Positions 33,900 to 45,934 of a stretch of DNA of 64,000 nucleotides are shown piece after piece; position 1 is the first letter of the stretch; every line of letters begins with the position of its first letter. A program made the translations under genes and the position numbers. This DNA is from Podarcis muralis. Lineage: Eukaryota. The notes under the pieces were generated by a model, which had not been told where the DNA came from, did no database searches, and saw only the letters and a program-made list of their open reading frames with translations. The DNA is taken from NCBI RefSeq assembly GCF_964188315.1, contig NC_135658.1, positions 50,654,001 to 50,718,000 on the forward strand. Reading direction: 5' to 3'.

Positions 33900-35101
33900 T
33901 ATACGAGACATCCATTTCTTTCTGGTATAGTTCCTCTGTGTATTCTTGCCACCTCTTCTTGATGTCTTCTGCTTTTGTTAGGTCCTGTCTTTTATTATGG
34001 AAATCTTTGTACGAAATGTTCCTTTCATATCTCCAATTTTCTTGAACAGATCTCTGGTTTTTCCCATTCTATTGTTTTCCTCTATTTCTTTGCATTGCTC
34101 GTTTAAGAAGGCCTTCTTGTCTCTCCTTGCTATTTTTTGGAAATCTGCATTCAATTTCCTGTATCTTTCACTATCTCCCTCGCATTTTGCTTGCCTTCTC
34201 TCCCCCGCTATTTGTAAGGCCTCATTGGACAGCCACTTTGCTTTCTTGCGTTTCCTTTTCATTGAGATGGTTTTAGTTGCTGCCTCTTGTATAATGTTAC
34301 GAGCCTCCATCCATACTTCTTCAGGCACTCTGTCCACCAAATCTAAATCCTTAAACCTGTTCCTCACTTCCACTGTGTATTCATAAGGGATTTGACTTAG
34401 ATTGTATCTTACCGGCCCAGTGGTTTTTCCTACTTTCTTCAGTTTAAGCTTGAATTTTGCTATAAGAAGCTGATGATCTGAGCCACAGTCAGCTCCAGGT
34501 CTTGTTTTTGCTGACTGTATAGAGCTTCTCCATCTTTGGCTGCAGAGAATATAATCAATCTGATTTCGATGCTTCCCATCTGGTGATGTCCATGTGTAGA
34601 GTCGTCTCTTATGTTGTTGGGAAAGAGTGTTTGTGATGACCAGCTTGTTCTCTTGGCAGAACTCTATTAGCCTTTGCCCTGCTTCGTTTTGAACTCCAAG
34701 GCCAAACTTGCCAGTTGTTCCTTTTATCTCTTGACTCCCTACTTTAGCATTCCAATCCCCTATAATGAGAAGAACATCCTTCTTTGGTGTCATTTCTAGA
34801 AGGTGTTGTAAGTCTTCATAGAATTGGTCAATTTCAGTTTCTTCAGCACCAGTGGTAGGTACATAAACTTGGATTACTGTGATGTTAAAAGGTCTGCCTT
34901 GCATTCGTACTGAGATCATTCTATCATTTTTGAGATTACATCCCAGTACAGCTTTTGCCACTCTTTTGTTGACTATGAGGGCCACTCCATTTCTTTTACG
35001 GGATTCTTGCCCACAGTAGTAGATGTGATGGTCATCCGAACTGAATTCACCCATTCCCTTAGTTCACCGATGCCCAGGATGTCAATATTTATTCTTGCCA
35101 T
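33900..35101 (-). mobile_element. Bov-B LINE internal fragment (APE endonuclease to pre-RT linker)
   Basis: ORF 33978-35054 has APE motifs (NGVALIV, IQVYVPT, IIGDWNAKVG, NQIDYIL, GSDHQLL). Homology continues out of frame (DLTKAEDIKKRWQEYTEELY) to ~33900. Confidence 0.9.
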
Positions 35102-37635: not shown

Positions 37636-40078
37636 CATTCAAAAACCCCTAAAAACTCTAAAACCCCCATTTTAAAATACACTATACTACAGAGACCCCT
37701 TATGCTGCGTTTAGAAGCAGAATTGCATTAGCGTAGAAACTGTTTTTAGGCGGCTAGTCCTGGCCTTTATAACCCTATACCTTCTTCCAGAAGGCAGAAG
37801 CTGAAAGAGATCATTTCCGGGGTGCGTACTATCATGTGCTATCTCTGCCGCTTTCTTATGGCACCTGGCAGCATAGATTTCATCTAAGGTGGGAAGAGTG
37901 CACCCAATAATTCTCTCTGCAGTCTTTACAACCCTGGATAGCATTGTTTTTTCCCTGGCCATGCAGCTCCCAAACCACACGCACAGACCATAAGTTAGTA
38001 CGCTCTCCACAGTGCAATGGTAGAATGCCATCAACAGGTCCTTTGAGAGATTGTTTTTCCGGAGGATTCTCAGAAAATATAACCTCTGCTGTGTTCTCTT
38101 CACCAGGTCTTTGCTGTTCTCTCCCCAGGATAGGTCGTCTCTCAACTCCATTCCCAGAAATCGAAACACAGAGACCTGTTCCACGCACTTCCCCTCAATA
38201 ATAAGTGGCTGAATATTCAATTTACATTTCCTAAAGTCCACAATGATCTCTTTTGTTTTCTTTAAGTTAAGCAGTAAGTTGTTTTTCCTGCACCACTCCC
38301 CCAACTGCTCAACTTCCTTCCTATAGGCCGTCTCCCCCTCTCCAGCCGTAATTAAACCAACCACCGTTGTATCATCTGCGAACTTAATGATCTTATTACT
38401 GGGGTATTTGGGGGCACAGTCAACTGTATAGAGCGTATATAAAAGCGGGCTCAACACGCACCCCTGTGGCGTCCCCATATTCATGATGAGATCCGCAGAG
38501 ACGTGGGAACCCAACCTGACCCTTTGGGAACGGTTTGATAGAAAGTCTAATATCCACCTGCACAAACATGGTGGAAGTCCCAGGTCTAATAATTTGGGCA
38601 CCAATCTATGCGGATAATAGTATTAAATTCAGAACTAAAGTCTACAAATAACAGTCTCGCGTAGTCTTGCTTCTCCAAATGAGTCAGGACAGCATGTAAA
38701 GCCATTGCCACAGCATCCTCTGTGGATCTCTTTGCCTTCTACGTAAACTGGTAAGGGTCAAGTCCCACTGGCAGACAAGATAAGATGTGCTTCCTCACCA
38801 GTTTTTCGAAACATTTCATTATAATGGGTGTCAGCGCCATAGGGCCAGAATCATTCAGACTCTATCTTTGATGTTTTTGGCAGGGGTATAATGGTAGCGG
38901 ATTTCAGACAGGGTGGAACAGTGGCTTGGGCCAGAGACTGGTTAAAAATCTTCGTAAAGATTCCTGCCAGTTGGTCCCAACAATCTCTTAGCACCCTGCC
39001 AGCCACCCCATCCGAGCCCAGAGCCTTCCTCGTGTTTACCTCCTTTAATATTCACCTCACTTCTCCCTCTTCCACCCTGGCAGCAATTCCTGTAGGTAGT
39101 GACGCCAATAGCTCTGGCATCCCTGTTGGAGTCACTGTTGGTGTCACCTCAAATCGGGCAAAGAAGGTATTCAACTCTCCCACCAAGGAAGCAGTACTCT
39201 CTACCACTGATGAATTCTTTGATTTATAACCAGTCAGATGTTGGACTCCCTGCCACATTTGTCTAGTATCATGATTTCTCAGATGGTCCTCATTTTTTCC
39301 TCTGTACTCTGCTTTTGCTTTCCTGATACCCCTCTTTAAGTTCGCTCTTTCTATGCCATACAATACCCGGTCCCCAGTTCTAAAAGCAGAATTTCTGGCC
39401 TTCAATAATCCCCTAACCTCTCCTGTCATCCAGGGCTTCCTATTTGGATACAACTTAACATACTTTTCCCTGGTGACATTTGCTGTGCAGAATCTAATAT
39501 AATCCAGGACCGTTGATGTATAAGGTTCTAGATCTTGATAGTCGAAGATATTCCAGTCGGTCTCCTGGAAACAGTCCTGCAGTTGCTGAGAGGCTCCCTC
39601 AGGCCACACCGTAACCATCCGTGTTTGTATCTGGCCTTGTTTCCTGAGGGGTGTGTATACTGGTGTCAGAAGCAGGGACACATGATCTGAACCACCGAGG
39701 TGCGCCAAGGTCTTGACCTCATATGCCCATCTAATGTTCGTATACACCTTGTCAAGAGTATTTTCTCCCCTTGTTGCACACTCAATGTGCTGATGGAATT
39801 TTGGGAGTACTGCCCTCACATCTGTGTGATTGAAGTCCCCCACAATAATGTGCACAGCCTCCGGGTATCTGCTCAATTTAGCATTGATGTTTTCATGCAT
39901 ACTGCTCATGGCCCTGCATGCATTTGCAGTTGGTGCTATGTACACCGCTGTTAACACCACTGTTGTAAATTCCCGGGGAAGATAGAAAGGTCTGCATTTA
40001 ATTGTCAGAAATTCCACATCCGGAGAACAGTAGGTATCCAACTTGACAGAGTCCGTGCACCAGTTTTGATTTACAAAA

Positions 40079-40080
<2 letters not shown>

Positions 40081-40123
<43 letters not shown>
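40081..40123. repeat. (CA)n microsatellite inside the Rex1 endonuclease ORF
   Basis: 43-nt run that reads in frame as (Val-Cys)7. Confidence 0.95.
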
Positions 40124-40126
<3 letters not shown>

Positions 40127-40465
40127 TGTTTCTTGCCAGAATCCTGTGTCCTGTCCCACCGGTACGTTGTAAAACCTTGTAATTCAACAGCTGTGTCTGG
40201 AATAGCTGAATTTAACCATGTCTCTGTGTGTATCAGCACACAACAATCCCGGATGTCTTCCTCCACTCCTACATGAAGCCTCCATTCATCAAGTTTATTT
40301 GCCAATGATCTCACATTAGCGTAAAAGATACTTGGAAGAGGTAGTTTGCATCGTTGTTTCCTTATCTTCCTTATCTTTATTCTCTCTTTCATTTGACCTT
40401 GTCCTCTACAGCCTCTCTTCTGCTTCCGCTCTCTTCTTCTCCTCCTCCTCCTCCTCCTCCTCCAA

Positions 40466-40878
40466 TGTCATGGTATTGACGGAGTACGAAGGGGAGGAGG
40501 AGAGACGAGCAGAGGAAGGGGGGCAGGAAGAGCCAGTGCAGGAAAGGGGGAAAAGCCAGGAGGAGGAAAGGCTCTCAGATGCTGGAGCAGAGCCTCCACC
40601 CCGCACAGGAAGTTCTGGAACGGATAGCGATGCAGTGTCAGTTCCATCTGCTCAGGAACGGAGAGGGTTAAAGCGGAGAGGGCAGAGACGTCAGTTGAGA
40701 ATGCCGCACCTCTTCTGTTGGAAAAGGGGCGGACGTAAATCACTCCGGGAATCTGACTCACAGGATTCGGACGTGTAATTATGTGTGCTGCTTGTACATA
40801 TGTAAAATAAAGACTGTATCTATGTATCTCTGAGTGAGTAGAAGCACTTCTTGTGAAGAGTATTCTCAAGCCATCACA
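40466..40878 (+). repeat. 5' LTR
   Basis: Differs from 45517-45929 at 5 positions (40551, 40622, 40707, 40708, 40735). Confidence 0.97.
40726..40752 (+). promoter_or_regulatory. GC box, Initiator (predicted TSS A40742) and 11-nt self-primer
   Basis: GGGGCGG at 40726-32. TCACTCC matches YYANWYY with A at 40742. ACTCCGGGAAT (40742-52) is the exact reverse complement of 40881-91. Confidence 0.7.
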
Positions 40879-40926: not shown

Positions 40927-42003
40927 ATGCAGAATCCATCGAAAGAGAAGAAAGGTACGCCAGAACCACCAAAGGGAGCGGTGGGGGGTACCACAGCAGG
41001 GCTTTCGGTGGAGGCAGTCTGGCAGCAAAATGTTTTACTACAAGCGCAGGTTGAGCAACTTGCCAGTAAACTGGACTTACAAGTGCAATTGTTGGAGGCT
41101 GAGAAAGCAAACAGGGGTAGCAAGATTGTGCCCTTACACCTCAATAAGTTTGATGGGAACAGTCAGAGATACTCCAGCTTCCGCACAGAGGTGCTATACA
41201 CGTTGGAGCTGAGGAAAAATGACTTTAAATCAGACCAAGAAAAAGTAGCGTTTGTGATCGCACATCTCGAGGGGAGTGCGAAAGATTGGGTGATTCCTTT
41301 GATGGCTGGGAATCACGCTGCTCTGAGGAGCGTGAAGGAATTTATAGATATGATGGACGCGGTGTTCCTGAGTACCTTGCATACTAAGGTCACGTCGCAA
41401 CAGCTCCTGAGCTTGAAACAGGGTAGCAGGCCAGTAAGAGTTTACTGGGCTCAGTTTGCTACGTTAATACATCAGCTGCAGTGGGCTATGGACTCTCCTC
41501 TGGTAGAAGCGATCTTCAGAGGGGGTTTGAACGCAGAGGTGCAGGATCAGCTTGCCAGGATGCCAGAACCCTCTAACTTTGATGAACTAGTGAGAATCTG
41601 CCTCCAGATTGGTTTAAGGGAGGAAGCCAGAGAGGCAGAGAGAAAGACTGCAGCCGGAAGAAATTGGCGCGAAAGTCGCATTCCAGAGATTCCAGAGCGC
41701 AAAATTGGCGGAGGGCCCAGAAAGAATGGGGAGGAGCCGATGGAACTGGGAGCTGTGCGCGCCAAAACCACTTCGACCGTTAGCACAATGGCAAAAGAGG
41801 GGAGGAGGGGCTGGAAGGAGACTAGGAAGTGTTTCCTATGCAGCCAGCCTGGACATATTGCCAAAAACTGTCCAAAGCGTCGTGCCTGGGAGTCCTTGTC
41901 AGGCGCAGAAGTGAAGGAGGGTAACGGAGCACAGGAGCAGGACCAGGGAAACGAGACAGCCTGGCTGGAAGAGGAGACCCCCAGCCGGGAAAGGAAGAAC
42001 TAA
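40927..42003 (+). CDS. gag: Gag (358 aa), retrotransposon capsid domain plus CCHC zinc knuckle
   Basis: First ATG after the LTR in GCCATG context. FDG...F, EKVAFVIAHLEGSAKDW, LKQGSRPV..Y...F, FRGGL and CFLCSQPGHIAKNC motifs. Confidence 0.93.
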   Translation: MQNPSKEKKGTPEPPKGAVGGTTAGLSVEAVWQQNVLLQAQVEQLASKLDLQVQLLEAEKANRGSKIVPLHLNKFDGNSQRYSSFRTEVLYTLELRKNDFKSDQEKVAFVIAHLEGSAKDWVIPLMAGNHAALRSVKEFIDMMDAVFLSTLHTKVTSQQLLSLKQGSRPVRVYWAQFATLIHQLQWAMDSPLVEAIFRGGLNAEVQDQLARMPEPSNFDELVRICLQIGLREEAREAERKTAAGRNWRESRIPEIPERKIGGGPRKNGEEPMELGAVRAKTTSTVSTMAKEGRRGWKETRKCFLCSQPGHIAKNCPKRRAWESLSGAEVKEGNGAQEQDQGNETAWLEEETPSRERKN

Positions 42004-42012
42004 GAGGTCTCC
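41946..42012 (+). promoter_or_regulatory. -1 programmed ribosomal frameshift signal (G-GGA-AAC plus H-type pseudoknot)
   Basis: Heptamer in Gag frame at 41946-52, then a 7-nt spacer. Stem 1: 41960-68 / 41981-89. Stem 2: GGAGACC 41973-79 / GGTCTCC 42006-12. The -1 frame is open into the protease. Confidence 0.88.
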
Positions 42013-42587
42013 GAGCCGGCACTCCAGTCCCTGGAATCACTTTGGAAGTGAAACTACAACTCCCAAATGGGCGACATCTGACTGTTCATGCATTAATTGA
42101 CTCTGGTGCATCTGCCGATTTTTTTGACATTGACTTGGCCCTGGAGCAGAGACTGGCATTAATTCCTTTAGATTTTCCCTTACAGGTCCAAACGATCGAT
42201 GGAAGGCCCCTGGTGGCGGGAGATGTCGCGTACCAGACCCCGCCTATGAGAATGGACATGGACCGCCATACTGAGACACTGTCCTTCCATGTGACTAAGC
42301 TGAGTGGACACCCCGTGGTATTGGGGATGAGTTGGTTAGCCAAGCACGACCCTGCCGTAGCTTGGCACCAAAGATCGCTCACGTTTGCTTCGGCCCACTG
42401 TCTTCAGAATTGTTTGGGGAGAAGAAGGGAGGATTCATTGGGAGTCCAGGGAGCTAAAGTGGGAGAGGAAGGGGTTCACACGGGGGAAGTGAACATACCT
42501 CATTACTATGCTGCCTACAAGGACGTGTTTAGTGAGAAGGAGGCAGACAAGCTCCCCCCCCCCACAGGGAGTATGATTGCAAGATAG
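41946..42587 (+). CDS. pol: Pol part 1: aspartic protease (reached by -1 frameshift), ending at a homopolymer frameshift
   Basis: ALIDSGA catalytic motif and PVVLGMSWL. The frame is lost in the C10 run at 42554-63. Confidence 0.88.
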   Translation, partial: GKRDSLAGRGDPQPGKEELRGLRAGTPVPGITLEVKLQLPNGRHLTVHALIDSGASADFFDIDLALEQRLALIPLDFPLQVQTIDGRPLVAGDVAYQTPPMRMDMDRHTETLSFHVTKLSGHPVVLGMSWLAKHDPAVAWHQRSLTFASAHCLQNCLGRRREDSLGVQGAKVGEEGVHTGEVNIPHYYAAYKDVFSEKEADKLPPPTGSMIAR

Positions 42588-45500
42588 ACTTGGTGCCAGG
42601 GGCCACGCTACCCCCTGGGAAGCTTTATTCTATGTCGGAGGCAGAAACGCAAGCTTTGAGGGAGTTTTTGGACGAAAACTTAAAAAGGGGGTTTATCCGA
42701 GAATCCACTGCAGCAGGGGGTTCCCCTGTTTTCTTTGTAAGCAAGAAAAACACGGATAGGCTTCGGCTGGTGTGTGACTTTAGATGGCTGAACAGTGTAA
42801 CGGTACCTATAGCCTACCCATTACCAAAGATTGGGGATTTATTGACGAAGGTCAGGACGGGGAAAATCTTCACGAAGTTGGATCTGAGGGGGGCTTATAA
42901 TCTGATCAGAATCCGAGAGGGGGATGAGTGGAAAACCACATTCTACACCCTATTTGGGTCATATGAGTTCTTAGTCATGCCCTATGGCTTACAGGCGGGA
43001 ACGGCCACATTTCAATCATTTATACAGCACGTGTTGGGGTCACTGCTGTACAAGAACTGTGTTTGTTATTTGGATGATGTACTCATCTTTTCAGAAACTG
43101 AGGAAGAGCATGTGAAGCACGTTACAGAGGTATTAGAGAGGCTGAAAAGGCATAAGTTGTATGCCAAGTTAGAGAAATGCCAATTCCACGTGAGAGAAGT
43201 GGAATTTTTGGGATACCGCCTCTCTACTGAGGGTATACACATGGAAAAGAGTAAGGTGCAAAGTGTGTTAGAATGGAAGCCACCCAAAACGAAAAAAGAT
43301 GTGCAAAGGTTCATAGGCTTCAGTAATTATTATAGAAATTTTATACCTAATTACGCACAAATCACGGCCCCCATAACCGATTGCCTGAGAGGTAAGAAGG
43401 CTTTCCATTGGACTATTGAGGCACAGGCCTCCTTTGAGAAATTAAAGAAGGTGTTTGCCTCAGAAGAATATTTGATACATGTAGAGCCAGGGAAGCCCAT
43501 GAGGGTAGAAACAGATGCCTCTGACAGAGCGGTGGGGGCCATACTATTACAAGAGGATCAAAAAAAGAACTGGAGGCCCTGTGCCTTTTATTCTAGGAAG
43601 CTAAGTCGTACTGAACAGAATTACACAATCTTTGACAAGGAACTTTTGGCTATAGTAGAGTCGTTCCGAGTTTGGAAGCACTTCCTAGCAGGTGCTCAAC
43701 AGCAGGTACAGGTGTATACAGACCACAAAAACCTAGAGTACTGGAGAAGGGCTAGGCTCCTGAATCAGAGACAAGTAAGATGGGCAGAGTTCCTGTCGGG
43801 CTTTAACTTCAAGATAGGGTATGTGCCAGGGGTGCAGAATGCAAGGGCAGATGCGCTATCCAGAAAACCCGAATACATGGAAGGGCAAGAGACTCCCACA
43901 GAGAGATATGTGTTCAAACCGGAACAATGGCAATGTGCGGCCACCATAGTAAGGGAGCAAGAACTGCAAACACTCACAGAAAGGGATGAGTATGCACAAA
44001 GGAAAGTGTTAGAAATAAGGCAAAACGAAGGCAGAGGGGGGAGTTTTGAGGAGAGAGAGGGTTTACTATATTACAAGGGGGTGTTGTATGTACCAGATGG
44101 GGAATTGAGGGCGAGAATTCTTAGACAACATCACGACAACCCGACGGCAGGGCATTTTGGGCGTAATAAAACTATGTATCTGATTACTAAGGAATTCTGG
44201 TGGCCCAAAATTAAGGATGACGTAGCAGAGTACGTCAGGGGCTGCGCAGTGTGCCAAAGGGCAAAGGGAGAAAGGGCCGCGGCTGCAGGCTTGCTCCAAC
44301 CTTTGCCCACACCTGATAGACCCTGGGAGATGGTCTCTATGGATTTTATCACAGACTTGCCGGCGTCTCAGAGAAAGACAGTGATTCTAGTAGTAGTGGA
44401 CATGTTGACAAAAATGGCACATTTCATACCCTGTACCAAAATGCCCTCGGCGCAAGAAACAGCCAAACTGTTTATAGACAATGTGTTCAGGTTGCATGGA
44501 ATAGCTTCAAGATTAATAACAGACAGAGGAAGTCAATTTACTTCACGTTTCTGGAGGAAGTTAATGGAGTTATTGGAGGTAGAAGTAAATTTCACCTCAG
44601 CTAGACATCCTCAAACCAATGGGCAATCAGAGAGAGTGAATGCTATATTGCAGCAATACTTGAGATGTTACGTAAGTCACCAACAAAATGACTGGGCTGA
44701 GAATTTGAGTTTGGCTGAATTTGCATATAATAATGCAGTGCACACCTCTACAGGGGTGTCGCCGTTCATGGCTAATTATGGGAGACACCCCCGAGCATTC
44801 CCTGGGAGGGAAGGAAGGTTGTTAGTGCCTGCAGCAGAAGAGTTTGTAGAGGAAATGGAATTCCTACATAGGATGCTGAAGGAGGACCTAGAAAGAGCAA
44901 AAATAGAATACAAGAGGACAGCGGATGCCAGAAGGAGGGAAGGAGAGAGGATACAAGTGGGAGACAAGGTTTGGTTGTCGTCCAGGGGGTTACCATTTAA
45001 GGGAAGGTGTAAAAAGCTGGAACCCCAGAAGCTGGGACCATTCGAAGTAATAGAACAGTTTAATCCAGTATCCTTCCGGCTCCGCCTACCAGAGAACATG
45101 AAAATACACCCTGTGTTTCACAGATCTTTACTATCACCATACAATCCTGCACACAGGTATCAACAGGAGGCAAGGGAAACTCCTCCATCTCCAACAGTGG
45201 TAGAGAATGGGGTGGAGGAGGAAATTGAAGAAATCTTGGATTCTAGGTGGTATAGAAATAGGTTGCAATACCTGGTGGCGTGGGAGGGTTGTCCAGAAAC
45301 TGAGAACTCCTGGGAACTGGCAGAATCCATTCACGCACCAGAATTGCAAAGGTCTTTCCATACAAGATACCCTCATAAACCTAGGCCACACGATTGGCAA
45401 TTAAGAGAAATTTTTGAGCAAACTGACGAGGAAGAGGGAGATTTCTTTGGTTTTCAATCCTCAGAAGAAAGTGAGAGTGACGTGGAGGAGGAGGAGGATC

Positions 45501-45829
45501 TTAGAAGAGGGGGTGATGTCATGGTATTGACGGAGTACGAAGGGGAGGAGGAGAGACGAGCAGAGGAAGGGGGGCAGGAAGAGCCAGTGCAGGAAAGGGG
45601 GGAAAGCCAGGAGGAGGAAAGGCTCTCAGATGCTGGAGCAGAGCCTCCACCCCGCACAGGAAGTTCTGGAACAGATAGCGATGCAGTGTCAGTTCCATCT
45701 GCTCAGGAACGGAGAGGGTTAAAGCGGAGAGGGCAGAGACGTCAGTTGAGAATGCCGTGCCTCTTCTGTTGGAAAAGGGGCGGACATAAATCACTCCGGG
45801 AATCTGACTCACAGGATTCGGACGTGTAA
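42563..45829 (+). CDS. pol: Pol part 2: RT, RNase H, integrase, chromodomain and LTR-encoded tail
   Basis: HREYDCKIDL, YLDD, TDAS...KELLA...TDH...ADALS, HHCC zinc finger, D-D-E (SMDF, ITDRG, QSER), GPF motif and chromodomain. Stop TAA at 45827-29 lies inside the 3' LTR. Confidence 0.95.
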   Translation, partial: HREYDCKIDLVPGATLPPGKLYSMSEAETQALREFLDENLKRGFIRESTAAGGSPVFFVSKKNTDRLRLVCDFRWLNSVTVPIAYPLPKIGDLLTKVRTGKIFTKLDLRGAYNLIRIREGDEWKTTFYTLFGSYEFLVMPYGLQAGTATFQSFIQHVLGSLLYKNCVCYLDDVLIFSETEEEHVKHVTEVLERLKRHKLYAKLEKCQFHVREVEFLGYRLSTEGIHMEKSKVQSVLEWKPPKTKKDVQRFIGFSNYYRNFIPNYAQITAPITDCLRGKKAFHWTIEAQASFEKLKKVFASEEYLIHVEPGKPMRVETDASDRAVGAILLQEDQKKNWRPCAFYSRKLSRTEQNYTIFDKELLAIVESFRVWKHFLAGAQQQVQVYTDHKNLEYWRRARLLNQRQVRWAEFLSGFNFKIGYVPGVQNARADALSRKPEYMEGQETPTERYVFKPEQWQCAATIVREQELQTLTERDEYAQRKVLEIRQNEGRGGSFEEREGLLYYKGVLYVPDGELRARILRQHHDNPTAGHFGRNKTMYLITKEFWWPKIKDDVAEYVRGCAVCQRAKGERAAAAGLLQPLPTPDRPWEMVSMDFITDLPASQRKTVILVVVDMLTKMAHFIPCTKMPSAQETAKLFIDNVFRLHGIASRLITDRGSQFTSRFWRKLMELLEVEVNFTSARHPQTNGQSERVNAILQQYLRCYVSHQQNDWAENLSLAEFAYNNAVHTSTGVSPFMANYGRHPRAFPGREGRLLVPAAEEFVEEMEFLHRMLKEDLERAKIEYKRTADARRREGERIQVGDKVWLSSRGLPFKGRCKKLEPQKLGPFEVIEQFNPVSFRLRLPENMKIHPVFHRSLLSPYNPAHRYQQEARETPPSPTVVENGVEEEIEEILDSRWYRNRLQYLVAWEGCPETENSWELAESIHAPELQRSFHTRYPHKPRPHDWQLREIFEQTDEEEGDFFGFQSSEESESDVEEEEDLRRGGDVMVLTEYEGEEERRAEEGGQEEPVQERGESQEEERLSDAGAEPPPRTGSSGTDSDAVSVPSAQERRGLKRRGQRRQLRMPCLFCWKRGGHKSLRESDSQDSDV
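45503..45516 (+). other. Polypurine tract
   Basis: AGAAGAGGGGG-TGA immediately before the 3' LTR. Confidence 0.85.
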
Positions 45830-45929
45830 TTATGTGTGCTGCTTGTACATATGTAAAATAAAGACTGTATCTATGTATCTCTGAGTGAGTAGAAGCACTT
45901 CTTGTGAAGAGTATTCTCAAGCCATCACA
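45517..45929 (+). repeat. 3' LTR
   Basis: 413-bp direct repeat of 40466-40878. Confidence 0.97.
45857..45862 (+). terminator. Polyadenylation signal AATAAA of the retrotransposon
   Basis: AATAAA 28 nt after the pol stop. Same site at 40806-11 in the 5' LTR. Confidence 0.7.
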
Positions 45930-45934
45930 TCCAA

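What the first reader, a model, noticed from the sequence alone, without database searches (positions are those of the whole stretch)
45422..45481. Acidic FxGF motif after the chromodomain: candidate LEDGF/TND tethering module in a retrotransposon integrase
Seen: TDEEEGDFFGFQSSEESESD, an acidic stretch, F-F-G-F and CK2-type Ser/Thr sites in a predicted disordered tail. Established: host proteins MLL1, JPO2/CDCA7L, PogZ, IWS1 and MED1 bind the LEDGF/p75 integrase-binding domain and related TFIIS N-terminal domains through acidic FxGF motifs enhanced by phosphorylation. Lentiviral integrases use LEDGF through a different interface. Inference: this chromovirus may have replaced direct histone reading (degenerate cage) with short-motif mimicry of a host elongation or chromatin factor partner. 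I am not aware of this being described for an LTR retrotransposon, but could not search the literature.
Basis: partly seen in the sequence, partly recalled or inferred. Interest (0 to 1): 0.8.

Follow-up and report, generated by a model that had tools for sequence, protein, structure and literature searches.

The report
Host-like LEDGF-binding motif in retrotransposon integrase
A lizard-type Ty3/gypsy retrotransposon has lost the histone-reading pocket of its integrase chromodomain and carries, right behind it, a conserved short motif that closely copies the one host proteins use to dock onto the chromatin tether LEDGF/HRP2. This suggests, but does not yet prove, a new way for a retrotransposon to choose where it inserts.

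Summary
Window 45422-45481 encodes TDEEEGDFFGFQSSEESESD, residues 945-964 of a 1079-aa RT-RNaseH-IN-chromodomain ORF. The ORF belongs to a complete chromovirus flanked by a target-site duplication (LTRs 40466-40878 and 45517-45929).

The motif is the core of a 41-aa cassette, the only sequence between the chromodomain and the polypurine tract. The cassette is a short hydrophobic helix, a 9-residue acidic linker, FxGF, then a Ser/Glu cluster.

The same module, single or in tandem, occurs in 11 related proteins. Nine are from Podarcis muralis and two are of unknown source. The anchor Phe, Gly and final Phe are invariant across 13 aligned modules.

Module bearers form one 100/100-supported group on an integrase tree. 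All of them have degenerate aromatic cages. The sister element and more distant relatives keep Y/W/Y-type cages and lack the module.

A profile of the modules searched against the whole PDB gave the same top hit twice: the LEDGF IBD-JPO2/CDCA7L fusion 5YI9, aligned on JPO2's IBD-binding motif. E-values were 0.3-0.6, but the real peptide beat 5000 of 5000 composition-matched shuffles.

Binding itself is untested. This copy has Gly where the strict [E/D]xExFxGF consensus has Glu. I found no literature precedent. The scan also noted tandem FxGF motifs in another gypsy integrase of this genome (s1-152615).

The parts
40461..40465 (+). Target-site duplication TCCAA, left copy
   Evidence: Identical 5 bp flank both LTRs.
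40466..40878 (+). 5' LTR (413 bp, TG...CA)
   Evidence: 408 of 413 positions identical to the 3' LTR.
40927..42003 (+). gag (Retrotrans_gag, zf-CCHC)
   Evidence: Pfam hits; ATG at 40927.
41925..42587 (+). Protease reading frame. It overlaps the end of gag in the -1 frame and ends at a stop at 42585-42587.
   Evidence: Pfam RVP_2; extent of the open frame.
42536..45829 (+). RT-RNaseH-integrase-chromodomain-tail reading frame. Its frame differs from the protease frame, so this copy has a frame break between PR and RT within about 42536-42587.
   Evidence: Pfam RVT_1, RT_RNaseH, Integrase_H2C2, rve, SH3_Tf2-1 and Chromo; frames.
45221..45367 (+). Integrase chromodomain (residues 878-926) with a degenerate aromatic cage, E877/W898/C901
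   Evidence: Pfam Chromo E 1.7e-10; alignment to CBX5; pLDDT above 90.
45392..45421 (+). Module part 1: DWQLREIFEQ, a predicted short helix with hydrophobic anchors L938, I941 and F942
   Evidence: The anchor Phe is invariant in 13 modules. AF2 models a helix over ORF residues 936-951 at low confidence. It aligns to LRRIF of the JPO2 IBM.
45422..45442 (+). Module part 2: acidic linker TDEEEGD with CK2-type T945. Nine residues lie between the anchor Phe and FxGF.
   Evidence: The T/S followed by acidic residues is conserved.
45443..45454 (+). Module part 3: FFGF (the FxGF core)
   Evidence: Gly and the last Phe are invariant; the first position is F, L or M.
45455..45499 (+). Ser/Glu cluster QSSEESESD (CK2-type S957, S961, S963) and the acidic run VEEEED
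45503..45513 (+). Polypurine tract AGAAGAGGGGG
   Evidence: It lies just upstream of the 3' LTR start. The same purine run followed by TGTCA occurs in L001 and L002.
45517..45929 (+). 3' LTR. Its first 310 nt also encode the last 103-104 residues of the pol ORF (stop codon 45827-45829).
   Evidence: The protein tail is conserved in A4.
45710..45778 (+). LTR-encoded basic tract RRGLKRRGQRRQLR and the LFCWKR motif near the C-terminus
   Evidence: A basic run followed by L[LF]CWKR is conserved in P0001, P0003, P0004 and P0121.
45930..45934 (+). Target-site duplication TCCAA, right copy

Best explanation
The stretch is the core of a bipartite short linear motif at the C-terminus of a chromovirus integrase. 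It runs hydrophobic helix (LxxIF), then 9 acidic or phosphorylatable residues, then FxGF, then a Ser/Glu cluster. It sits in a disordered cassette inserted between the chromodomain and the polypurine tract.

It most likely acts as a host-mimicking IBD-binding motif, that is, an FxGF-type TND-interacting motif. In this reading it docks the integrase, and so the intasome, onto the TFIIS-N-terminal-type domain (IBD) of the H3K36me2/3 readers LEDGF/PSIP1 or HRP2/HDGFL2. CK2 phosphorylation of the flanking Ser/Thr would strengthen binding. Integration would then be steered toward transcribed chromatin. This would replace the methyl-lysine reading that the cage-less chromodomain can probably no longer perform.

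Shown here: the motif, its architecture, its conservation, its clade restriction, the co-occurring cage loss, and its specific resemblance to the JPO2/CDCA7L motif.

Inferred: binding to LEDGF/HRP2, the phospho-switch, and any effect on insertion sites.
For: 1. The sequence and its placement are established.

2. Conservation. Eleven homologues carry the module once or twice: P0001-4, P0121, P0123, P0130, P0146, P0270 and P0271. In the 13 aligned modules the anchor Phe, Gly and last Phe are invariant, although the tails are otherwise barely alignable.

3. Phe and Gly codons differ between modules (TTC/TTT, GGT/GGG), so the constraint acts on the protein.

4. None of the 100 other chromoviral pols in the first search has FxGF in its tail, across about 8,000 tail residues.

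5. Module bearers form one group with 100/100 support on the integrase tree. The sister P0009 lacks the module, keeps a Y/W/Y cage, and runs from the chromodomain straight into PPT/LTR-like sequence. All module bearers have degenerate cages, whereas most other chromodomains in the set are YWY or FWY.

6. Module profiles searched against 177,635 distinct PDB sequences gave 5YI9_A as the only hit (A3) or the top hit (A5). 5YI9_A is the LEDGF IBD fused to JPO2/CDCA7L, and the match lies on the JPO2 motif. That peptide scores 18.7 bits against the module HMM, and 0 of 5000 shuffles reached this. It is 54% identical to this copy's module.

7. The architecture fits the published definition of a TIM: helix, acidic linker of 8-16 residues, and an FxGF that is essential for the LEDGF/HRP2 TNDs, with CK2 enhancement (PMC9987994).

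8. The tail is modelled as disordered, with a helix just before FxGF.
Against: - No binding experiment or complex model exists.
- The PDB E-values (0.56 and 0.33) are not significant on their own.
- Other solved IBM ligands (MLL1, PogZ, IWS1, MED1 fusions) did not appear at E<=10.
- The DPF3a IBM peptide does not score above shuffles: 1.8 bits, and 22% of shuffles score as high or higher.
- This copy has Gly950 where the strict [E/D]xExFxGF consensus has Glu.
- Some Podarcis first modules read LEGF, MEGF or FEEF.
- The module was found only in lizard sequences and two sequences of unknown origin.
- Cage loss and module gain are one phylogenetic event, not replicated.
- This copy lies beside LINE fragments, which says nothing about a preference for gene bodies.
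Confidence: 0.55

Rival explanations
1. It is a genuine, selected short linear motif, but its partner is not LEDGF/HRP2. Candidates include another TND (TFIIS, Elongin A, MED26, PNUTS, IWS1), histones bound in the manner of acidic-aromatic chaperone motifs, or a nuclear import or other factor.
For: Conservation shows function but not the partner. TIMs are read by several TNDs (PMC9987994). The tail is strongly acidic, with 41 D/E in 153 residues, and has few aromatics. The PDB match is below significance. The DPF3a IBM does not score.
Against: According to the review, FxGF is specifically required by the LEDGF/HRP2 TNDs and is optional or absent for the others. The best structural-database match is a LEDGF-IBD ligand, and it shares the anchor, the spacing, the T-D linker and the F-x-G-F-x-x-S pattern.
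Confidence: 0.25
2. The acidic module is an intramolecular regulator. It would fold back on the basic LTR-encoded C-terminal tract or on DNA-binding surfaces of integrase, for example as an auto-inhibitor or DNA mimic, rather than acting as a host tether.
For: A conserved basic tract (RRGLKRRGQRRQLR, followed by LFCWKR) lies about 90 residues downstream in the same tail. Pairs of acidic and basic tails are common auto-regulatory devices (general knowledge).
Against: Charge complementarity alone does not explain the invariant Phe...Phe-x-Gly-Phe, or the specific resemblance to the JPO2 motif.
Confidence: 0.08
3. It is a chance match in low-complexity acidic sequence and has no function.
For: FxGF is only three fixed residues. 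The tail is compositionally biased. The strict consensus is not met in this copy.
Against: A chance match has an estimated probability of 0.2-1.3% for this tail. The module is retained in every member of a clade whose integrases differ by 35-50%, with invariant key residues. It is duplicated in several lineages, and it is absent from 100 other tails.
Confidence: 0.06
4. The conservation reflects a cis-acting nucleic-acid element next to the polypurine tract, such as plus-strand priming context or RNA structure, rather than a peptide.
For: In this copy the module ends about 50 nt upstream of the PPT.
Against: In elements with tandem modules, the modules lie at different and larger distances from the PPT. 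Synonymous codon differences occur at the invariant residues. What is conserved is an amino-acid pattern.
Confidence: 0.04

Closest known systems
IBD-binding motifs (IBM, or FxGF-type TIM) of host proteins, above all JPO2/CDCA7L bound to the LEDGF/p75 IBD (PDB 5YI9); also MLL1, IWS1, PogZ, MED1, ASK and DPF3a
   Same: Both are disordered. Both have a hydrophobic helix anchor (LRRIF in JPO2, LREIF here), an acidic Ser/Thr-rich linker of 9-10 residues containing T-D, an FxGF core, and a following Ser with acidic residues that give CK2-type sites. This copy is 54% identical to the JPO2 peptide (PMC9987994).
   Different: Here the motif is carried by a retrotransposon integrase, not a cellular transcription or chromatin factor. 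This copy has Gly instead of Glu/Ser at position -2. Binding is untested. The similarity to DPF3a is limited to the three Phe and the Gly.
Lentiviral integrase-LEDGF/p75 tethering (HIV-1)
   Same: The proposed host partner (the LEDGF/HRP2 IBD) and the proposed outcome (integration biased to transcribed chromatin) are the same (PMC9987994).
   Different: HIV uses a folded surface of the catalytic-core dimer. Here a linear, host-like motif in a disordered C-terminal tail would do the job.
Gammaretroviral (MLV) integrase C-terminal tail binding the BET ET domain; Ty5 integrase targeting domain binding Sir4 (stated from general knowledge, not tested here)
   Same: In each case a short peptide in the integrase C-terminal tail acts as a tether to a host chromatin protein. 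Ty5 targeting is also regulated by phosphorylation.
   Different: The motif is different and so is the predicted partner.
Chromoviral integrase chromodomains that read H3K9 methylation (MAGGY and Tf1 class)
   Same: The element class is the same, and a chromodomain sits at the same position after the integrase SH3-like domain.
   Different: Two of the three cage aromatics are lost here (E/W/C), and the module is appended. Relatives with intact cages lack it.
PogZ, a domesticated pogo transposase that binds the LEDGF IBD
   Same: It is a transposon-derived protein carrying an IBM (cited in PMC8022399).
   Different: PogZ is a host gene derived from a DNA transposon. It is not an active element's integrase.

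Membership tests
LEDGF/HRP2 IBD-binding motif (FxGF-type TND-interacting motif) | F-x-G-F core | tested here: met
   FFGF at residues 952-955. Gly and the last Phe are invariant in 13 modules.
LEDGF/HRP2 IBD-binding motif (FxGF-type TND-interacting motif) | Strict consensus [E/D]-x-E-x-F-x-G-F (Tesina 2015, as quoted in PMC10538959 and PMC8022399; S is allowed at -2 per PMC7337902) | tested here: not met
   This copy reads E-E-G-D-FFGF, with Gly at -2. The acidic context is otherwise present. The strict pattern is met in related modules of P0121, P0123, P0130 and P0146 and P0271 (read from the sequence).
LEDGF/HRP2 IBD-binding motif (FxGF-type TND-interacting motif) | Upstream short helix with hydrophobic anchor residues | tested here: inconclusive
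   The pattern hydrophobic-x-x-hydrophobic-F is conserved and the Phe is invariant. AF2 draws a helix over ORF residues 936-951, but at pLDDT about 50-55.
LEDGF/HRP2 IBD-binding motif (FxGF-type TND-interacting motif) | Acidic, Gly/Ser/Thr-containing linker of 8-16 residues between the helix and FxGF (PMC9987994) | tested here: met
   Nine residues (EQTDEEEGD) lie between F942 and F952. The related modules have 9-10, and the JPO2 peptide has 10.
LEDGF/HRP2 IBD-binding motif (FxGF-type TND-interacting motif) | Lies in an intrinsically disordered region | tested here: met
   AF2 pLDDT is about 46-56 across the tail, against more than 90 for the chromodomain.
LEDGF/HRP2 IBD-binding motif (FxGF-type TND-interacting motif) | CK2-type phospho-acceptor sites in the linker or flank | tested here: met
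   T945, S957, S961 and S963 fit S/T-x-x-D/E. This is a sequence-level match only; phosphorylation has not been shown.
LEDGF/HRP2 IBD-binding motif (FxGF-type TND-interacting motif) | Direct, FxGF-dependent binding to the IBD/TND | not testable with these tools
The test needs NMR, ITC or pull-down.
Chromovirus (Ty3/gypsy LTR retrotransposon with an integrase chromodomain) | LTRs with a target-site duplication; gag-PR-RT-RNaseH-IN order; chromodomain C-terminal to integrase | tested here: met
Chromovirus (Ty3/gypsy LTR retrotransposon with an integrase chromodomain) | Canonical three-aromatic methyl-lysine cage | tested here: not met
   The cage reads E877/W898/C901 against Y/W/F of CBX5. The cage is degenerate in all module bearers.

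The most novel reading that the evidence does not exclude
A clade of lizard chromoviruses switched its integration tether. It gave up chromodomain reading of methylated histone tails. In its place it acquired, by convergence or by capture from a host gene such as CDCA7L, one or two copies of a cellular-type LEDGF/HRP2-binding motif. This would be the first retrotransposon known to hijack the H3K36me reader pathway by linear-motif mimicry, and an independent parallel to lentiviral use of LEDGF.
Probability: 0.5. Interest if true: 0.8.

Novelty: new variant of a known kind. Interest (0 to 1): 0.68.

Why it matters
Where a retroelement inserts decides both its own fate and the damage it does to the host. 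Known tethers are few: LEDGF for lentiviruses, BET proteins for gammaretroviruses, Pol III factors or Sir4 for the yeast Ty elements, and H3K9me for chromoviruses.

A retrotransposon that carries a copy of a host protein's LEDGF-docking motif would have three consequences:
- It would show that the LEDGF/HRP2 hub has been exploited independently, and by a different molecular route, outside the retroviruses.
- It would give a natural example of an element changing its chromatin niche by swapping a reader domain for a short motif.
- It would add a ligand from outside the cell's own proteins to the TND/TIM interaction code.

The proposal can be tested directly with a 40-residue peptide.

Tried and rejected
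- A phmmer search of the 55-aa tail piece against the PDB found nothing at E<=10. Only profiles of several modules reached the JPO2 fusion.
- A word-indexed homologue search scored on the tail alone (residues 921-1079) gave no hit. This is uninformative, because the nearest relative, P0146, is outside that tool's length window.
- Read laying was meant to measure selection among genomic copies. The internal region is low-copy, and no variant was listed between 45155 and 45557 in four runs, so no dN/dS-type test was possible. The reads did show that the LTR is about 10-30 times more abundant than the interior.
- The DPF3a IBM peptide aligns by eye but scores no better than shuffles, so I do not count it as support.
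- My loose regex flagged P0028 and P0076. Those hits are the conserved FLGF of reverse transcriptase and are irrelevant.
- Complex prediction was not attempted.
- The bacterial, viral and plasmid DNA collections were not searched, as they are irrelevant to a vertebrate retroelement.
- The genomic neighbourhood (LINE ORFs on the minus strand) gives no information on target preference from a single insertion.
Full report
**The observation.** Window 45422-45481 on the + strand translates to TDEEEGDFFGFQSSEESESD. These are residues 945-964 of a stop-free 1079-codon frame (42590-45829). Pfam resolves that frame into reverse transcriptase, RNase H, integrase zinc finger, integrase core, a Tf2-type SH3 domain and a chromodomain at residues 878-926.

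- AlphaFold2, run on an alignment of nine tails, models the chromodomain at pLDDT above 90 and everything after it at about 50. A low-confidence helix ends exactly at the FxGF.
- Four Ser/Thr fit the CK2 pattern S/T-x-x-D/E: T945, S957, S961 and S963.
- Aligned to human CBX5, the three aromatic cage positions Y/W/F read E877/W898/C901. The "degenerate cage" is therefore real.

**The element.** The ORF belongs to a complete LTR retrotransposon.

- It has 413-bp LTRs at 40466-40878 and 45517-45929 that differ at 5 positions. They have TG...CA ends and a TCCAA target-site duplication.
- gag runs from 40927 to 42003. The protease frame (41925-42587) overlaps the end of gag in the -1 frame.
- The RT-IN frame is open from 42536, but in a different frame from protease. 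This copy therefore has a frame break between PR and RT.
- The polypurine tract AGAAGAGGGGG (45503-45513) lies just before the 3' LTR. The pol frame reads through it and 103-104 codons into the LTR.
- Between the end of the chromodomain fold (…HKPRPH) and the PPT-encoded LRRGG there are only 41 residues. They are DWQLREIFEQ, TDEEEGD, FFGF, QSSEESESD and VEEEED. The finding is therefore the core of a discrete cassette, not a random part of a long tail.

**Is it more than chance?** Shuffling this 153-residue tail 200,000 times gives FxGF in 1.3% of shuffles. FxGF with an acidic upstream context appears in 0.18%.

Conservation carries more weight.
- In a search scored on the integrase C-terminus, only the four closest relatives align through the motif: P0001-3 from Podarcis muralis and P0004 from an ENA assembly, at 49-55% identity. 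All four carry an acidic FxGF preceded by W-x-x-V/M-F.
- An exhaustive profile search of 1.84 billion representatives, and a third word search, added P0121 (a Logan contig) and P0123, P0130, P0146, P0270 and P0271 (all Podarcis).
- Several of these carry two modules in tandem.
- In an alignment of 13 modules, the anchor Phe, the Gly and the last Phe are invariant. The first FxGF position is F, L or M. A Thr/Ser followed by acidic residues, and a Ser three positions after the motif, recur. The rest of the tails hardly align.
- Phe and Gly codons differ between modules, which argues for constraint on the protein.
- None of 100 other chromoviral pol proteins from the first search has FxGF in its post-chromodomain tail.
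- A bipartite regex (hydrophobic-x-x-hydrophobic-F, 8-11 residues with at least 4 acidic, then [FLM]xGF) hits only module bearers in 196,278 residues of collected proteins. It hits only this site in the six-frame translation of the window.

**Phylogeny and the cage.**
- On a maximum-likelihood tree of 60 integrase regions, the five full-length module bearers form one group with 100/100 support. This copy is the earliest branch under midpoint rooting.
- Their sister, P0009 (also Podarcis), lacks the module and keeps a Y/W/Y cage. It passes from the chromodomain directly into sequence resembling the PPT/LTR junction.
- The next relatives, including amphibian elements, also have intact cages and no module.
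- Across all chromodomains collected, every module bearer has a degenerate cage. The bulk of the others are YWY, FWY, WWF or WWY.
- In the window and in the two DNA loci fetched (L001, L002), the modules are followed by a purine run and the same TGTCA LTR start. The architecture chromodomain, module(s), PPT, LTR is therefore shared.
- Cage loss and module gain thus map to the same branch. That fits a functional swap, but it is a single event.

**What the module resembles.**
- The TND review (PMC9987994) defines TND-interacting motifs as an obligate short helix with hydrophobic anchors, an acidic Gly/Ser/Thr-containing linker of 8-16 residues, and an FxGF. The FxGF is optional in general but present in, and essential for, all known ligands of the LEDGF and HRP2 domains. 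CK2 phosphorylation of the linker raises affinity.
- The module has all of these parts, with a 9-residue linker.
- A profile of eight modules, searched against all 177,635 distinct PDB sequences at E<=10, returned a single hit. It was 5YI9 chain A, the LEDGF IBD fused to JPO2/CDCA7L, aligned on the JPO2 motif EELRRIFIEDTDSETEDFAGFTQSD (E 0.56).
- A profile of 13 modules again ranked it first (E 0.33), followed by two designed proteins.
- These E-values are not significant by themselves. But that one of the few such ligand chains in the PDB ranks first twice is hard to ascribe to chance.
- The JPO2 peptide scores 18.7 bits against the module HMM. The mean of 5000 composition-matched shuffles is -0.6 (sd 2.8), and none reaches the real score.
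- The peptide is 54% identical to this copy's module.

Several limits apply.
- Other solved IBM fusions did not appear.
- The DPF3a IBM peptide (PMC7337902) scores no better than shuffles.
- This copy has Gly at the -2 position of the strict [E/D]xExFxGF consensus. Five related modules meet that consensus fully.

**Mechanism proposed.** The integrase tail presents a host-like IBD-binding motif. CK2-type phosphorylation would tune it. It would dock the intasome on LEDGF/PSIP1 or HRP2/HDGFL2, which read H3K36me2/3 through their PWWP domains. That would bias insertion to transcribed chromatin instead of the H3K9me heterochromatin targeted by cage-intact chromoviruses.
- Shown here: the motif's architecture, conservation, clade restriction, co-occurrence with cage loss, and resemblance to the JPO2 ligand.
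- Inferred: binding, phospho-regulation and any effect on targeting.
- I put this reading at about 0.55.
- The main rival, at about 0.25, is a real motif with another partner (another TND, histones, or a transport factor).
- Intramolecular regulation, chance, and a cis-acting nucleic-acid constraint are less likely, for the reasons given under rivals.

**Novelty.** Full-text searches combined FxGF, LEDGF, TND/TIM, LTR retrotransposon, chromodomain and chromovirus. They found the host-protein literature and the fly JIL-1/JASPer case, but no retrotransposon integrase carrying such a motif. In kind, this is a C-terminal integrase peptide tether, as in MLV-BET and Ty5-Sir4 (general knowledge). The predicted partner is LEDGF, known from lentiviruses, but reached by a different, host-mimicking interface. 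I class it as a new variant of a known kind. Another first-stage note reports tandem FxGF-like motifs in a different gypsy integrase of the same genome (s1-152615). I did not examine that locus, but it matches the tandem form seen in the Podarcis proteins.

**Other data.** Contigs of four public runs of the same organism cover the chromodomain-to-PPT stretch, with no listed variant between 45155 and 45557. LTR sequence is 10-30 times deeper and highly variable. Two of the runs may be RNA, but that is only a guess by the tool. The insertion lies next to LINE endonuclease and RT ORFs on the minus strand.

Noticed in passing
window 45517-45829: The pol frame reads through the PPT and 103-104 codons into the 3' LTR. 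The LTR-encoded end carries a basic tract followed by L[LF]CWKR and an acidic Ser-rich terminus. This end is conserved at protein level in P0001, P0003, P0004 and P0121, so U3 appears to be genuinely coding. This agrees with note s1-181871.
   Followed up: partly
window 42536-42587: The protease frame ends at a stop at 42585-42587, while the RT frame is open from 42536 in another frame. This copy therefore has a frame break inside pol despite 98.8% identical LTRs. It could be a real mutation or an assembly error.
   Followed up: partly
window 41925-42003: The protease frame overlaps the end of gag by about 78 nt in the -1 frame. This is the layout expected for programmed -1 frameshifting. No slippery site or structure was examined.
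   Followed up: no
window 45517-45929 versus 44600-45512: In genomic contigs of two DNA runs, the LTR is about 10-30 times deeper than the internal region and carries many variants. This suggests numerous solo LTRs, or LTRs shared with other elements, while the coding interior is low-copy.
   Followed up: partly
window 45099-45585 and 44681-45475: Contigs from two small runs that the tool guesses to be RNA (X10, X17) span the chromodomain, the module and the LTR junction with 1-10 differences. This is a hint of transcription, not proof.
   Followed up: no
window 33978-35054, 37711-38604, 39052-40392 (minus strand): LINE-type ORFs (endonuclease/exonuclease/phosphatase and RVT_1) lie immediately upstream of the insertion. 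The chromovirus landed in or beside an older non-LTR element, within a CTC-rich run. A (CA)n microsatellite lies at 40073-40122.
   Followed up: partly
P0001-P0003 module 1; P0270 module 1: In tandem-module elements the first module is often degenerate in the FxGF core (LEGF, MEGF, FEEF), while the second keeps FRGF. This may mean relaxed constraint on one copy after duplication.
   Followed up: partly
P0009 C-terminus (Podarcis muralis): The cage-intact sister lineage goes from the chromodomain almost directly into a Gly/Arg-rich stretch (…RGGPGRGDGVM…). That stretch resembles the PPT/LTR-junction translation of this element. The module therefore looks like an insertion at that junction.
   Followed up: partly
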